Shown here in pieces: positions 30,939 to 35,549 of a DNA stretch of 64,000 nt. A model generated the notes under the pieces. The model made no database searches. It saw nothing but the letters and a program-made list of their open reading frames with translations, and was not told the DNA's origin. Positions within the stretch are counted from its first letter, which is position 1. Every line of letters starts with the position of its first letter. Position numbers and translations under genes: made by a program. The DNA lies in assembly GCF_000315625.1 (NCBI RefSeq), contig NW_005434666.1, forward strand, positions 543,877-607,876, given 5' to 3'. This DNA is from Guillardia theta CCMP2712 (taxonomy: Eukaryota; Protista; Cryptophyta).

Positions 30939-32881
30939 ATGGGGGCCATCATCAGCCATGAGAGCCGGGGCGCCTCCTTCTCGGACCCTCACTTCACCCG
31001 CAACCACCCCATGGACAAGAGCCCCAAGTCAAAGTCCATGTCAGACCTCTCCCTGCTGCACAAGAGGAACCCGAAGGGTCCAGCCCGCGACTCCTTGGAG
31101 CTCGATGTGGAGGAGAGAGAGGGAGGTAGAGGGAAGGCGGTACACAGGGAGCTGGCGGAGCTGGAAGAGGTCACGTCGGCTCAGGTGCAGTCGTTGCGGA
31201 GGGAGTTCGAGGAGGTGTCTGCACCCAACGCCTTCATGAGCTTTGCGACCCTCAACAAGTTCCAGACCAGGATGATCCGAAGGAAGGGGGAGAGCTTCTA
31301 CCGCAAGCTCGCAGGCATCTCTCCCCTCCTCCGATCCCCCAAACCCTCGGAGAAGGACATCAGAGCCTTGGCAAGGAAGCTCTGCGTGCGAGGTAAGGGC
31401 CAGCTGCCGACGTTCTCCTCCCCCCAACTCTCCTCCTCATGTCTGCTGCTTCAGTGTTCAAGCATTATCGACTCTGGGACGAGGACGAGGACGAGCCAGG
31501 AGGAGATGCCGTTGTTACCTTCGAGCAGTACTTGGCTGTTGTGTACAAGATGAAGATCAAGGTAAGCGCGGCCATGGCAGCGAGACCTGGTTGCTCACTC
31601 CTCGCCCAGGAAGAGAAGCACCCCTCCTGCGCCAGTCAGAGCAAGAGCGGGTCCAAGAGCATCTTGAAAGCTGGCTGGAAGGAGGAGGCGAAGGGCGGGG
31701 AAGGCAAAGATGTGCAGCTAAGGAGGGCTGTCGAGTTTCAGGATCACCCTTCCGAGGAAGTCATGGACGAGGAGTGGAAGTTGAAGATGATGACGTCAAC
31801 GAGGCTACGTGATGAAGGTCAGCGTTGCGGAGTGGCGGGAAGATGGAAGTGAGGAGCGGAGAAGTGGCGGAGAGGGGAGCGAGGGGAGGGAAAAAGAGGA
31901 TAGAGGACAGACAAGAGGAGAGAAGGAGAAAGGAGAGGAGAAGTGAGGGTAGAGGACATGTGTTGAATGTGTTCAAACAGAGGAGGTGCAACTGCTCAAG
32001 TTTCGCGGTCTTCACGTCGACGACAATGCTGTGAGACATCTTGGCTGATGCCCATGGCTGGGAATCACACAGCCCGCAGGCTGCGAATCAGGATGAGCCG
32101 CCTGACCGGGTCTCTGGTAATAGAGAAAACACTTGTTGACAGGATGATGATGAAGAATGGGGAGAGGGAGAAGAGAAATGAGAAGGGAATGGGTTGAGAA
32201 AGATAGGGAAGATTGTGGATTTGATTCCTTGAAATTTGAGTAGCAGAGCAAGGGCACAGCGGGGACGAAGAAGAGGGGACGGGAAGGAGAGCGGAGGTGA
32301 AGGATTTGGATAGCAAAGCGGAGGAGGACCAAGGGGTTCACAGCAAACTGGTGAATGTGGTTCCTCATCGATCGATGAGTTTCAAGCGAATCGTAAGATC
32401 CTGCATTGCCAAATTCCTCCCTTACCCCTTATCGTTTGCAACCCTTCACTCCCTCCTCTCCGTTCTTCCGTCTACTCCCTCACCGCCCCTTCATCCCTCC
32501 TCTTCCTCTCCTCCCTATCTGCCTTCCCCTCCATCTCCTCCTCTTGCTTACAATTCCTTTCTTCCTTTCTTCCTCTCTTCCTCTCCCTCTCTCCGTGTAC
32601 TCTTCACGCAAAGTGCAGAAGGAGCAGTATGCTCAGCATCCATCGACCGGGGTCAACCTCGCTTACGTCAGCCATCTCCAAAACCACCTCGTCAAAGTCT
32701 CTCTGCTCCTCCATAAGCCGCCGGCCTGACGCGCGTGCAGGAGCTTGTCTTCGAGCTGTCGGAGGAGGAGGTTCACTGCAAGCTTGAGGTGATGAAGGAC
32801 ATCAAGATGTCCATCGAGCGGGAGCTCGAGCGGCAGCAAAACGAGTCCAAGGAGGGGAAGCAAACTTTACACATGAAATGA
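30939..32881 (+). CDS. Hypothetical protein, possible N-myristoylation site (MGAIIS), degenerate EF-hand-like segment
   Basis: ORF 30936..31553 plus spliced exons ending ...ERELERQQNESKEGKQTLHMK* at 32881. Confidence 0.5.
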
Positions 32882-32899: not shown

Positions 32900-35321
32900 T
32901 CAGCCCCTCCACGACATGGACATGGCATGAAAGTTCTTCAGCCCCGACGTGGCAGTGTTCTCCCTCCAGCTCTCGTCCGCGTTTCTCGCTTCCACCTCGT
33001 CCAACCTGCTTGTCAGGGACACCAGCGACATGGATTGGCTCCGATGCAGGCTGGGGGTCTTGTGGCTTGCCGCGTTCCTTGACAGCCCGAGCTCGAGGCA
33101 GAGCGAGTTACAGCGGTGGGTGTGAAAGAACTGCTTGACTCCGTCCAGCCCGAAGTTTCCCTTGCCGAAGATGTCCTCCTGCGACGGGTCGACGCTATGG
33201 ATCTGAGGGTCCGTCCAGTAGTTCCCCACACCCTGGATGTCGCAAATGAGGATCCTCTTGTCACTCGCGTCCCACGTGAAGTGGCTGAAGGCCTGGGGGA
33301 CGGCCTCCTCCGTCCCGATCTCTCCGTAGTTGTCGTTGTGCTTCACATACTCCCCCTCCAGCAGCGGCTCGATCGTCACGAGCTGGTTCTCGCGCTCGTG
33401 GAGCCTGAGGACCTCCATGGGAAGGAAGCAGATCTTGGACTTGACGCACTGATGGGTGTTGAACTCGTTGGCGTACTCTTGGGCTAGCGACTGGTTGAAG
33501 GAAAGAGTGTCAGAAGAAACTCGAAGAATTTCAAGAGGAACAAAGGGGGCGGAAGGAGGAAAGGAGGAGAAGGAGGAGAAGGAGGAATAGGAGGAGAAGG
33601 AGGAGGAGGAGGAGAAGGAGGGATCAAGGACCTGATTTATAACTTCTTGGAAGAACTGGTTGGGTGTTGCCTTCATCTTCCATGTCTTGGCCACCTTCAC
33701 ATCCTTGGTCATCACAACTCAAACGAGTCTTCTCCTGCTCACCTTCAGCACTGTGTTGGAGTTGTGAAAGACCTCGATCTTGAAACAGGCTCGGAAAGTT
33801 CCCTCCGCAAACGGCTTGTCCCCTATCCTAACATGTACAAAATACTTGTTCCACCTGTTGGCTTTGGCAGAGAAAGAGTAGCACGTGGCCGACTCGAAAT
33901 CATCGGAAGGAGGTAAATTGTGCTGCAAACTTGTCTTGTCTACCCTTGCCTTCCTCTTCTCCGCATATCCTTTCAGAAACCTGCGACAAGGCGAAGAAAC
34001 ATCAGGGAACGGGAGGGAGGGAAGCAAAACAAGAGGGACAGGAATCAAAAGAGGAAGGCGGGAGAGGGGCAGCAGGTGTCAAGGCATACTTTAGCACGTC
34101 CCGGTGCCTCTGTACATTGCTCTTGAGCATGGCCAAGAAGTCGTAGACGCTAAAAACCAGCACGCTGCAGTCCGAGGAGGCGTCGACATCGCAGACTCGC
34201 TGGACTTGGTCATGGTCCTTCAGCCGCGCGTTGCTGTCTTTCAGCAGGCACTTGACGGCTGCGATGAAGGAGATCTCCCCGAAGATGTCTCCGCTCTTGA
34301 GAACCTCCAAGACCTTGCCGTCCAGGTTTGCATTCGCAGTGCCCGCATCCAGAAAATACTGCAGAGAGGAGGGTGAGAGGGAGCGCAGGGAATGCAAGAG
34401 AGAGGACCATGCTCGTTCCCACCGTCCCCTTCTCAATCATCTTGTCTCCCTGCTTGTAACTCCTCTTCTTCATCTTCGACATGCAGAAGGTAAAGTCTTC
34501 CTCGGACAGCATCTGGAACAGCTCGAAGTCTCTCCACTGGATCTGGTGGACCTCGAGGATCGATGCTCTCCTCGGTTTCAGCCCTCCATTCTGCACGCTA
34601 GACTTCTTCGCTCGGATGAACCTCTCGTCCGCAAAGTCGCGGAGCACTCTGTTGGCCGCGTTCCAGGGAGGGAACCAAGACCGTCAGTCGAAGAATGGGA
34701 CAGGAAAGAGAAATTACCTGAGCACTTCTCTGTTCCCCGGCAGGTCACCCTTCAAGATCTCCAGGAAATCGTTCACGTGCAACTCCAGGCATCGACACTG
34801 CTTCTTGGCCCTCACGTCGCAGACCCGCTGCAGGTTTGGGAAATCCTTCAGGTTCGCCTTGGGGTTCTTGAGGAGGATCTTAAGCGCTGAGATGAAAGCG
34901 ATCTCCCCGAAGAAGTCTCCACTCCCAAGGACTTCAATCACTTTCTCTCCTATCACTGCACCCGCGACACCAACATCTAGAAAATACTGCAACAATGGTC
35001 ATATACCGGACGTCATGAAACAATGTGCAGGTATACCAAACGATCCCCCAGCGTTCCTCTCTTCAGGATTGTGGAGCCTGCTTCAAACATCTTGACCTTC
35101 ATCACGCTGATACACTTGTTGAGATTGACAGGCGAGAGAAGTTGAAACAGCATGAAATCTGTCCATGACGCTTCCAGTAAGACCGCTCCACACTCTGCGC
35201 TTGACTTCTCATTCTCGCTGTTCGTGATGGGAAACTCTGGCGCCCGCCAGATGCTGCCATCATCTTGGCTTTTCCTTCTGTTTCTCACGAACTTCTGCGG
35301 GGGAGGCGCCTTGCCCTCCAT
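32900..35321 (-). CDS. Alpha-kinase (eEF2K/MHCK family) with two N-terminal cyclic-nucleotide-binding domains
   Basis: CNB1 YFLDVG...GDFFGEIAF...QRVCDVRA; CNB2 YFLDAG...GDIFGEISF...QRVCDVDA; kinase PFAEGTFRACF, VAK, IEPLLEGEYVKHNDN, QAFSHFTW, ICDIQG, TDPQIH, GKGNFG, HRCNSLC. Confidence 0.9.
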
Positions 35322-35549
35322 GCTGACTGAAAACGGAATTTGTGAGAACGCAAGATGATTTTTGTGACACCTCCCTCCCTCTTGCCTCGCAACTTTCCTG
35401 CCCGTCCTCTCTGCTCCTAATCTAGTCCCTTCATCATCCTGTTCCTAACTTGCTCTCTTTCAGTTCCGCCCAGGTGGCTTCTCAAGAGATCGCAACCCAT
35501 CATGTCGGCGGCATTGGCATCCGAGCAGGCGGCAAGGAGGTAGACTGTC

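What the first reader, a model, noticed from the sequence alone, without database searches (positions are those of the whole stretch)
32900..35321. Alpha-kinase with two CNB domains: PKG-like architecture on an atypical kinase
Seen after splicing: CNB-CNB-alpha-kinase with all catalytic and Zn-binding motifs intact, plus RRKS before CNB1 and PRRASI before CNB2. Known: tandem CNB plus kinase is the PKG design, which uses a conventional ePK domain. Characterised alpha-kinases carry CaM-binding, WD40, vWA, Ig or TRPM partners. Inference: a convergently evolved cAMP/cGMP-regulated kinase, with the RRxS motifs as autoinhibitory or PKA sites.
Basis: partly seen in the sequence, partly recalled or inferred. 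Interest (0 to 1): 0.78.

Follow-up and report, generated by a model that had tools for sequence, protein, structure and literature searches.

The report
Alpha-kinase fused to two cNMP-binding domains
A cryptophyte alga really does make one transcript that joins two cyclic-nucleotide-binding domains to an atypical (alpha-type) protein kinase, a PKG-like layout built on an unrelated kinase fold, found so far only here and in one sister alga, and untested biochemically.

Summary
Observation confirmed. Window 35321..32900 (minus strand) is a seven-exon gene of 651 codons with six GT-AG introns. A spliced 1776-nt contig in a public run removes all six introns and links both CNB domains to the kinase. 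A 649-aa transcript-derived protein of Hanusia phi (P0248, Pfam cNMP_binding + Alpha_kinase) is tiled by the seven exons without a gap at any junction, at 66-91% identity.

All alpha-kinase catalytic and zinc residues are present. Both CNB domains keep the FGE and Arg of the phosphate-binding cassette, but each carries a conserved 17-residue insert there. Cyclic-nucleotide control is therefore plausible but inferred.

RRKS is not conserved in Hanusia (RSKS); PRRAS is, and it sits on a predicted disordered linker.

None of about 270 close alpha-kinase relatives listed shows a CNB domain, and three literature searches on the pairing found no description of it. In the same genome (Guillardia theta by its paralogues' names) the nearest CNB paralogues are fused to CDC14-like phosphatases.

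Verdict: a new architecture made of known domains. Exons were never joined; whole-protein work used P0248.

The parts
32900..35321 (-). Whole coding region, start codon to stop codon, of the CNB-CNB-alpha-kinase gene (651 codons, 7 exons)
   Evidence: splice sites, phases; spliced contig 33087-35328; exons tile Hanusia P0248 1-648
35037..35321 (-). Exon 1 (residues 1-95): leader predicted disordered, RRKS at 35268-35279, N-terminal helices and first strands of CNB1
   Evidence: (66% identical to P0248 1-95)
34718..34986 (-). Exon 2 (269 nt, residues 96-184 plus 2 nt): beta-barrel, phosphate-binding cassette and hinge of CNB1. FGE at 34894-34911, 17-residue insert at 34834-34884, Arg149 at 34825-34827
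   Evidence: cNMP_binding 3e-7; alignment to the HCN1 CNBD shows the insert and the aligned Arg; 90% identical to Hanusia
34408..34648 (-). Exon 3 (residues 185-265): C-helix of CNB1, linker with PRRASI (RRAS at 34561-34572), N-terminal part of CNB2
   Evidence: 85%; residues 205-216 pLDDT below 50
34090..34358 (-). Exon 4 (269 nt, residues 266-354 plus 2 nt): barrel, phosphate-binding cassette and hinge of CNB2. FGE at 34266-34283, insert at 34206-34256, Arg319 at 34197-34199
   Evidence: cNMP_binding 7e-6; G288, F291, G292, E293 and R319 nearly invariant among 48 CNB sequences; 91%
33743..33980 (-). Exon 5 (residues 355-434): C-helix of CNB2 running into the alpha-kinase N-lobe (PFAEGTFR at 33791-33814)
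   Evidence: 82%; aligned with MHCK-A N-lobe
33632..33694 (-). Exon 6 (residues 435-455): VAK with the family-conserved catalytic Lys437 (33686-33688)
   Evidence: joint 33691/33740, cut +3; Hanusia reads ...VLKVAKTW...; Lys in 51 of 51 aligned relatives
32900..33490 (-). Exon 7 (residues 456-651 plus stop): alpha-kinase C-lobe. Glu496, His525, Asp539, Gln541, Asp549, GKGNFG loop (33149-33166), zinc motif HRCNSLC (33098-33118). Then a 60-residue Ser-rich tail (HRSQS at 33032-33046)
   Evidence: Alpha_kinase 1.5e-40; (orthologue kinase domain pLDDT 91-98)
33491..33631 (-). Intron 6: 141 nt, in frame, without a stop, made of a CT/GA-rich simple repeat. ORF finders read through it
   Evidence: 271-aa ORF reads through; contig joins 33490 to 33632; absent from Hanusia protein
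33695..33742 (-). Intron 5, 48 nt
33981..34089 (-). Intron 4, 109 nt, splits a Lys codon between CNB2 and the kinase part
34359..34407 (-). Intron 3, 49 nt, at the same place in CNB2 as intron 1 in CNB1
34649..34717 (-). Intron 2, 69 nt, same phase as intron 4
34987..35036 (-). Intron 1, 50 nt

Best explanation
Shown: this is one expressed nuclear gene of a cryptophyte alga (Guillardia theta by the names of its paralogues). It encodes a 651-residue protein made of a short leader predicted to be disordered, two tandem cyclic-nucleotide-binding (CNB) domains, and a C-terminal alpha-kinase domain with a complete active site and zinc site. A sister alga, Hanusia phi, has the orthologue.

Inferred: the tandem CNB module is a cis-acting regulatory unit, as in PKG or in PKA-R joined to C. 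Without ligand it would hold the kinase inactive. Binding of cAMP or cGMP at the conserved Gly-Glu...Arg cassette would move the hinge and C-helix. In CNB2 that helix runs into the kinase N-lobe after only about 12 residues, so the movement could release activity.

The two CNBs probably arose by duplication of an exon pair inside this gene. The conserved PRRAS site on the flexible inter-CNB linker is more likely an input from a basophilic kinase than a pseudosubstrate. Which nucleotide binds, and what the kinase phosphorylates, are unknown.
For: Single spliced mRNA: one contig of run X1 skips all six introns and spans 33087-35328, while the DNA runs hold the unspliced form. Orthologue: P0248, Hanusia phi, 649 aa, Pfam PF00027 (79 bits, 2 stretches) plus PF02816 (159 bits). 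The exons tile it 1-95, 96-184, 186-265, 266-354, 356-434, 435-455 and 456-648. The CNB barrel exons are the best conserved parts (90-91%), so the CNB domains, inserts included, appear to be under constraint.

CNB fold and key residues: an AF2 model of P0248:1-365 has both CNBs at pLDDT above 90, and its best PDB matches are Plasmodium PKG, Toxoplasma and yeast PKA-R, and human PKG I-beta CNB-A/B (E about 1e-17). FGE and the cassette Arg align with canonical CNBs.

Kinase: nearest solved relatives are MHCK-A (1e-34) and eEF2K (1e-33). Lys437, Glu496, His525, Asp539, Gln541, Asp549, His580, Cys582 and Cys586 are all kept.

Context: the genome holds at least 81 nucleotide-cyclase domain matches and 27 phosphodiesterase matches. 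The same CNB type is fused to other enzymes, CDC14-like phosphatases in four genes, as expected of a portable regulatory module.

Internal duplication: exons 2 and 4 are both 269 nt with the same phases and the same intron position. They are 54% identical to each other against at most 46% to any paralogue, and they group together in a tree, though weakly (79/90).
Against: No binding or activity data exist. Each phosphate-binding cassette has a 17-residue insert, modelled as an elongated helix plus a loop; I know of no ligand-binding precedent for this. The residue after the Arg is Val rather than Ala, Thr or Ser. CNB folds can bind other ligands or none: the fold search itself returned Trypanosoma PKA-R structures bound to nucleosides. 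Exon 4 alone scores just under Pfam's cut-off. No evidence was obtained for a CNB-kinase contact: complex prediction would not fold the pair, and the full-length model was poor in the CNB half. Expression looks low in the one raw RNA run (5 reads from about 6% of the run).
Confidence: 0.5

Rival explanations
1. The architecture is real, but the CNB domains are not cyclic-nucleotide receptors. The 17-residue insert in the phosphate-binding cassette would re-shape or fill the pocket, so the domains either bind a different small molecule or act as ligand-independent regulatory or dimerisation modules, as in KCNH channel CNB-homology domains or nucleoside-binding trypanosome PKA-R.
For: The insert is in both cassettes and in every paralogue of this CNB subfamily in the genome, at 12-25 residues. 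Its first half is a conserved amphipathic helix extension. The residue after the Arg is Val/Cys-Asp rather than Ala-Ala-Thr. The fold search returned nucleoside-binding PKA-R structures among the matches.
Against: Gly-Glu and the Arg that bind the ribose and the cyclic phosphate are kept in both domains, in the Hanusia orthologue and in all paralogues. By my own knowledge, domains known to have lost cNMP binding have usually lost that Arg; the Trypanosoma entry title lists a T318R restoring mutant. The N-terminal end of the cassette helix, which faces the phosphate, is unchanged in the model.
Confidence: 0.3
2. The kinase is controlled mainly by phosphorylation (PRRAS on the inter-CNB linker, RSxS in the C-tail) or by partner proteins. 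On this reading the CNB module serves mostly localisation or oligomerisation, with cyclic nucleotide having no direct effect on catalysis.
For: PRRAS(I/V) and HRS(Q/H)S are conserved between Guillardia and Hanusia and lie in segments predicted disordered. eEF2K, a known alpha-kinase, is controlled by PKA phosphorylation rather than by direct cAMP binding (review PMC2827801).
Against: This does not explain why the CNB barrels and cassettes are the most conserved parts of the protein, nor why the same cassette precedes catalytic domains in other genes. Phosphorylation control and cNMP control are not mutually exclusive.
Confidence: 0.15
3. The fusion is an artefact: two neighbouring genes (a CNB protein and an alpha-kinase) were read together.
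For: One public protein model on this scaffold is only a 97-aa piece of the kinase domain. A contig across two genes is not in itself proof of one transcript (tool caveat).
Against: Intron 4 splits a codon between the CNB2 and kinase parts, and it is spliced in the RNA contig. There is no in-frame stop or start between the parts. An independent transcript-derived protein of another species has the same continuous chain.
Confidence: 0.02

Closest known systems
cGMP-dependent protein kinase (PKG)
   Same: Regulatory tandem CNB domains sit N-terminal to a protein kinase domain on one chain. The tandem CNB model matches PKG CNB pairs structurally (Plasmodium PKG, human PKG I-beta CNB-A/B, E about 1e-17).
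   Different: The catalytic domain is an alpha-kinase (nearest to MHCK-A and eEF2K), not an AGC-type kinase. No N-terminal coiled coil or conserved pseudosubstrate is evident. The phosphate-binding cassettes carry a 17-residue insert and have Val where cGMP-selective sites have Thr/Ser (own knowledge).
PKA regulatory subunit (RI/RII, Bcy1, apicomplexan PKA-R)
   Same: Tandem CNB-A/B with a long B/C helix between them and a basic RRxS-type motif in a flexible segment before a CNB domain. These are among the best fold matches (5j3u, 3of1, 2qcs).
   Different: Here the module is covalently joined to its presumed target kinase, which has a different fold. RRAS lies between the two CNBs, not before CNB-A. 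There is no dimerisation/docking domain.
Dictyostelium MHCK-A and eEF2 kinase (alpha-kinases)
   Same: Same catalytic fold and residues: Lys, Glu, the Asp-x-Gln motif, the phospho-accepting Asp, the N/D loop and the His/His/Cys/Cys zinc site.
   Different: Those are regulated by coiled-coil/WD40 parts or by Ca-calmodulin, and by a phospho-Thr docking into a Pi-pocket (Lys684/Arg734/Thr736; PMC4876393). Here the partners are CNB domains, and Arg734/Thr736 are Glu/Val. The latter is also so in many close relatives, so it is not distinctive.
Tandem-CNB + CDC14-like phosphatase paralogues of the same genome
   Same: Same insert-bearing CNB subfamily placed N-terminal to a catalytic domain.
   Different: The effector is a DSPn+DSPc phosphatase (human CDC14B 1e-73). 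Their CNB-A and CNB-B form separate clades (95/91 and 95/95), apart from both CNBs of the kinase gene, so the two tandems seem to have arisen separately.

Membership tests
Alpha-kinase family (Pfam PF02816) | Profile match over the curated cut-off | tested here: met
   139.7 bits (cut-off 21.3) for the exon-7 ORF; 159 bits for orthologue P0248, positions 1-185 of 185
Alpha-kinase family (Pfam PF02816) | Catalytic Lys, Glu, Asp-x-Gln, metal-binding/phospho-accepting Asp, and the Gly-rich N/D loop | tested here: met
   Lys437, Glu496, Asp539, Gln541, Asp549 and GKGNFG, aligned to MHCK-A Glu713, Asp756, Gln758 and Asp766, and invariant in 65 relatives. Which of Lys434 and Lys437 matches MHCK-A Lys645 differs between the pairwise and the family alignment
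Alpha-kinase family (Pfam PF02816) | Zinc site His...His-x-Cys-x3-Cys in the C-lobe | tested here: met
   His525, His580, Cys582 and Cys586 match MHCK-A His742, His794, Cys796 and Cys800
Alpha-kinase family (Pfam PF02816) | Protein kinase activity | not testable with these tools
   Needs an enzyme assay
Cyclic nucleotide-binding domain (Pfam PF00027) | Profile match over the curated cut-off, two copies | tested here: met
   P0248: 79.4 bits, 2 stretches. Window exon 2 alone 30.8 bits (cut-off 27.5); exon 4 alone 26.3 bits, which covers only part of the domain
Cyclic nucleotide-binding domain (Pfam PF00027) | Eight-stranded beta-barrel with flanking helices | tested here: met
   AF2 model with both domains at pLDDT above 90; PDB matches PKG and PKA-R at E about 1e-17
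Cyclic nucleotide-binding domain (Pfam PF00027) | Phosphate-binding cassette residues Gly-Glu and Arg | tested here: met
   F121-G-E123...R149 and F291-G-E293...R319; the Arg aligns with the HCN1 cassette Arg and is nearly invariant in 48 CNB sequences
Cyclic nucleotide-binding domain (Pfam PF00027) | Cassette of canonical length (Glu to Arg about 9 residues) | tested here: not met
   Glu to Arg is 26 residues in both domains: a 17-residue insert relative to HCN1. This is shared by the whole paralogous subfamily
Cyclic nucleotide-binding domain (Pfam PF00027) | Binds cAMP or cGMP | not testable with these tools
   Needs a binding assay
cGMP-dependent protein kinase (PKG) | Tandem CNB domains N-terminal to the kinase on one chain | tested here: met
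cGMP-dependent protein kinase (PKG) | AGC-type conventional protein kinase catalytic domain | tested here: not met
   Only Alpha_kinase is found, with no Pkinase match. It is therefore not a PKG, only PKG-like in layout
cGMP-dependent protein kinase (PKG) | N-terminal dimerisation helix and autoinhibitory pseudosubstrate | tested here: inconclusive
   Residues 1-45 are predicted disordered. RRKS is not conserved in Hanusia (RSKS)

The most novel reading that the evidence does not exclude
This is the first natural alpha-kinase gated directly by a cyclic nucleotide. It would be one arm of a cryptophyte-specific effector set in which one insert-bearing CNB cassette has been wired to opposing enzymes: an alpha-kinase here and four CDC14-like phosphatases elsewhere in the genome. 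cAMP or cGMP would then switch both phosphorylation and dephosphorylation without PKA or PKG.
Probability: 0.35. Interest if true: 0.75.

Novelty: new variant of a known kind. Interest (0 to 1): 0.6.

Why it matters
Direct cyclic-nucleotide control is known for conventional kinases (PKA, PKG), exchange factors (Epac) and channels, not for the structurally unrelated alpha-kinases. From the review read here and my own knowledge, the known inputs of alpha-kinases are Ca-calmodulin, WD40/coiled-coil, vWA or channel partners. A cNMP-gated alpha-kinase would be an independent re-invention of the PKG principle. It would give a simple system for asking how a CNB switch couples to a foreign catalytic fold, and it would extend the list of cNMP effectors in algae that are very rich in cyclases. 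A practical point: at least one public protein model at this locus is only a 97-aa fragment, so architecture surveys based on that model would miss the fusion.

Tried and rejected
(1) My first acceptor for intron 5 (a 39-nt intron, adding Asp-Val-Lys) was rejected: the RNA contig and the Hanusia protein both show the 48-nt intron.

(2) An upstream ORF beginning MGC... at 35500 cannot be joined in frame to the ATG at 35321 through any GT..AG pair that I could find (by eye). Hanusia starts at the equivalent Met.

(3) An exhaustive HMMER search with exon 7 gave, besides a 97-aa fragment of the window's own protein, only relatives of at most 56% identity. None of the 150 carries a CNB like ours, and Pfam on the 73 with long flanks showed SHOCT, WD40, C2 and others but no cNMP_binding among the 25 commonest families.

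(4) A profile search with those kinases listed 120 more architectures (PDZ, UBA/UQ_con, FHA, Sel1, WW, EF-hand), none with PF00027.

(5) A full-length search with P0248 found no further full-length relative. The ESM Atlas gave only a weak bacterial CNB cluster. A metagenome scan gave CNB-only contigs and no hit to the kinase half. All of these searches are word- or pattern-limited, so absence is not proven.

(7) The full-length AF2 model made with a mixed alignment modelled the CNB half badly (pLDDT 30-65). It is used only for the kinase domain.

(8) The idea that loss of the MHCK-A-type Pi-pocket marks this kinase as differently regulated was dropped as not distinctive. Arg734/Thr736 are Glu/Val here, but about 40% of close relatives also lack the Thr.

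(9) A second CNB near a second alpha-kinase 12-15 kb upstream of the window (contig C8, 528.7 kb and 531.7 kb) proved to be separate genes, with an opposite-strand Exo_endo_phos gene between them.

(10) The look-up of encoding contigs held no record for the 97-aa model, so I could not see how the rest of the locus is annotated publicly.

(11) Three literature searches on the pairing (alpha-kinase with cyclic nucleotide-binding, cNMP, or the Pfam names) found no description of this fusion. A looser search and a check of the one borderline paper added nothing. The searched library is open-access only.
Full report
**What is there**

The finding's coordinates are exact. On the minus strand an ATG at 35321 opens a reading frame interrupted six times, ending at a TGA at 32902-32900. 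I placed GT..AG introns by eye and checked the phases by arithmetic, exon by exon. Every search on the window's gene was made exon by exon, by reference. Whole-protein work was done on an orthologue that a search returned.

Pfam finds cNMP_binding in exon 2 (3e-7) and exon 4 (7e-6), and Alpha_kinase in the exon-7 ORF (1.5e-40).

**One transcript**

One contig of 1776 nt in public run X1 lies on 33087-35328 in seven pieces. It skips exactly 34987-35036, 34649-34717, 34359-34407, 33981-34089, 33695-33742 and 33491-33631, all CT..AC on the plus strand, that is GT..AG on the gene's strand. Contigs of runs X3 and X4 cover the same places unspliced, so they are DNA.

This corrected my intron 5 from 39 to 48 nt. 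It also showed that the 141-nt, in-frame, stop-free repeat that an ORF finder reads through is an intron. Intron 4 splits a codon between the second CNB domain and the kinase part, so the two halves are read from one mRNA. The final model is 651 codons.

A raw RNA run of the same species label gave only five reads from about 6% of the run, so expression there is low.

**Organism**

The assembly has 87.1 Mb in 669 contigs. Paralogous alpha-kinases returned by a protein search are named GUITHDRAFT, Guillardia theta CCMP2712.

**Orthologue**

I built a profile from the window's exons 1-4, each as a separate row, together with CNB paralogues of the same genome. It retrieved P0248, a 649-aa protein of Hanusia phi from EukProt, carrying PF00027 and PF02816. 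Pfam confirms it: cNMP_binding 79 bits in two stretches, Alpha_kinase 159 bits.

The seven window exons tile it as 1-95, 96-184, 186-265, 266-354, 356-434, 435-455 and 456-648. The two split codons fill residues 185 and 355, and there is no gap at any junction. Identity is 66% for exon 1, 90% and 91% for the two CNB barrel exons, 82-86% for exons 3, 5 and 6, and 76% for exon 7, whose tail diverges. An independent transcript-derived protein of a second species therefore supports the start codon, every splice junction and the architecture.

**The kinase half**

P0248 matches solved MHCK-A (1e-34), eEF2K (about 1e-33), ALPK1 and TRPM7 kinase domains. The numbering offset to MHCK-A is fixed by His742, Asp756, Gln758, Asp766, His794, Cys796 and Cys800. 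With it, the window protein has His525, Asp539, Gln541, Asp549, His580, Cys582 and Cys586, plus Glu496 and the GKGNFG loop. These columns are invariant or nearly so in 65 relatives.

The family alignment puts the catalytic Lys at Lys437 (VAK, the first codons of exon 6). The pairwise alignment prefers Lys434, so a Lys is present either way. The orthologue's kinase domain folds with pLDDT 91-98. I see no reason to doubt that it is an active alpha-kinase.

MHCK-A's phospho-Thr docking pocket (Lys684, Arg734, Thr736; PMC4876393) is not kept: the window has Glu and Val at the last two places. The same holds for many close relatives, so I draw nothing from it.

**The CNB half**

Alignment of exon 2 with the HCN1 CNB domain shows the canonical FGE, then 17 extra residues, then an Arg aligned with the cassette Arg. 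Exon 4 has the same layout.

In an alignment of 48 CNB sequences, G288, F291, G292, E293 and R319 are nearly invariant.

An AF2 model of P0248:1-365 gives both domains pLDDT above 90. It has the usual N-terminal helices, barrel and hinge, and a long C-helix (177-205) between the domains. The cassette helix is lengthened to 13 residues (123-135) and followed by a loop. Residues 1-45 and 205-216 are predicted disordered.

Foldseek's best matches are Plasmodium PKG, Toxoplasma and yeast PKA-R, and the human PKG I-beta CNB-A/B pair (E about 1e-17). TM-scores are low because the relative position of the two domains differs.

So the fold and the ligand-contacting Gly-Glu/Arg are there, but the cassette is not canonical. 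After the Arg comes Val-Cys-Asp. By my own knowledge this gives no hint of cGMP selectivity, which is usually marked by Thr/Ser at that place.

**The insert is a family trait**

The window's CNBs have about 16 paralogous exons in the genome. All carry a 12-25-residue insert at the same place, with FGE and Arg kept. Their hosts are informative. Four genes have tandem CNB followed by a CDC14-like phosphatase (DSPn + DSPc; human CDC14B 1e-73), and one has CNB + MORN repeats. The cassette is therefore a portable N-terminal module placed in front of different enzymes.

In a small tree the two CNBs of the kinase gene group together, each with its Hanusia counterpart. They sit apart from the CDC14-type CNB-A and CNB-B clades. 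Support for the grouping is weak (79/90), and a long-branch sequence joins it.

Exons 2 and 4 are both 269 nt, with the same phases and the same intron position, and are 54% identical. Together with the tree, this points to duplication of an exon pair within this gene before the two species split.

**The RRxS motifs**

RRKS (residues 15-18) reads RSKS in Hanusia. PRRASI (209-215) reads PRRASV and lies in the disordered inter-CNB linker. A third conserved basic-Ser motif, HRS(Q/H)S, is in the C-tail.

These are plausible sites for basophilic kinases. For comparison, eEF2K is controlled by PKA phosphorylation (PMC2827801). A pseudosubstrate role for an alpha-kinase is unlikely by what I know of alpha-kinase substrate preferences. 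Nothing was tested here.

**How common is the architecture?**

An exhaustive HMMER search of 1.84 billion representatives with exon 7 gave 4132 alpha-kinase relatives. None of the best 150 has a CNB like ours. Pfam on the 73 with long flanks, and the precomputed Pfam of 120 more, list SHOCT, PDZ, UBA/UQ_con, C2, FHA, WD40, Sel1, WW and EF-hand partners, but no PF00027.

A full-length search with P0248 found only itself. A metagenome scan found only CNB relatives, and the ESM Atlas gave nothing useful. Three full-text searches on the pairing found no paper describing the fusion (a looser search and a check of one borderline paper added nothing). The main review of the family lists other partners.

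These searches are limited by word indexes, list lengths and an open-access library, and I could not query InterPro architectures. 'Only Guillardia and Hanusia' therefore means 'only those found'.

A public model on this scaffold is a 97-aa fragment of the kinase domain. I could not see whether other models cover the rest of the locus.

**Mechanism**

Shown: gene, transcript, architecture, intact kinase motifs, CNB fold with key residues, conservation, and a genome rich in cyclases (at least 81 domain matches) and phosphodiesterases (27 matches).

Inferred: the CNB module inhibits the kinase in cis, and cAMP or cGMP relieves this. CNB2's C-helix (about 347-371) runs into the first kinase strand (384) after about 12 residues. 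Ligand-driven hinge and lid movement would therefore be passed directly to the N-lobe.

I put about 0.5 on cNMP-regulated kinase activity and about 0.3 on the CNBs being pseudo-receptors or receptors for another ligand. I put about 0.15 on control mainly by phosphorylation or partners, and about 0.02 on a two-gene artefact.

**Verdict**

It is a new combination of known domains with a narrow known distribution.

Noticed in passing
Same genome, outside the window: L026/L030 (G000:C214:32919-36988), L027/L031 (G000:C6:885747-889833), L028 (G000:C46:112469-115735), L029 (G000:C46:254143-257403): Four genes with tandem insert-bearing CNB domains in front of a CDC14-like dual-specificity phosphatase (DSPn+DSPc; human CDC14B 1e-73). 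A possibly cNMP-regulated CDC14 would be unusual in its own right. Two metagenome proteins (P0249, P0250) share the architecture.
   Followed up: partly
L025 (G000:C99:218634-221879): An 878-aa open frame with one CNB domain of the same subfamily followed by MORN repeats.
   Followed up: partly
Window 33491-33631 (minus strand): Intron 6 is 141 nt, in frame and without a stop, and consists of a GGAGGA/CT-rich simple repeat. Six-frame ORF finders therefore fuse exons 6 and 7 with 47 spurious Ser/Pro-rich residues. The reads tool also skipped 33554-33626 as repeat.
   Followed up: yes
Window 33080-33370 (protein P0001): A public protein model on this 1,194,225-nt scaffold is a 97-aa fragment of the kinase C-lobe. 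Annotation-based architecture surveys using that model would miss the fusion.
   Followed up: partly
Window 32735-32881 (plus strand): An ORF on the opposite strand ends at 32881, 19 nt from the kinase gene's stop at 32900. The two convergent genes would have abutting or overlapping 3' ends. No RNA coverage was seen there in the runs laid.
   Followed up: no
Whole genome G000: At least 31 Alpha_kinase matches (about 20 loci), 81 nucleotide-cyclase domain matches and 27 PDEase_I matches: a large alpha-kinase family and a rich cyclic-nucleotide toolkit.
   Followed up: partly
L033 (G000:C8:526500-534500), 12-15 kb before the window start: A single-CNB gene and an alpha-kinase gene lie on the same strand 2.7 kb apart, but they are separated by an opposite-strand Exo_endo_phos gene, so this is not a second fusion.
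   Followed up: yes
Window 34239: One low-depth contig of run X4 lacks one base here (depth 4). The other runs agree with the window, so this is probably an assembly error.
   Followed up: no
Window 35417-35500 (minus strand): A short upstream ORF starts MGCDLL... (a myristoylation/palmitoylation-like start), about 180 nt before the gene's ATG. I found no in-frame splice to the main ORF, and its status (uORF, 5' UTR or nothing) is unknown.
   Followed up: partly
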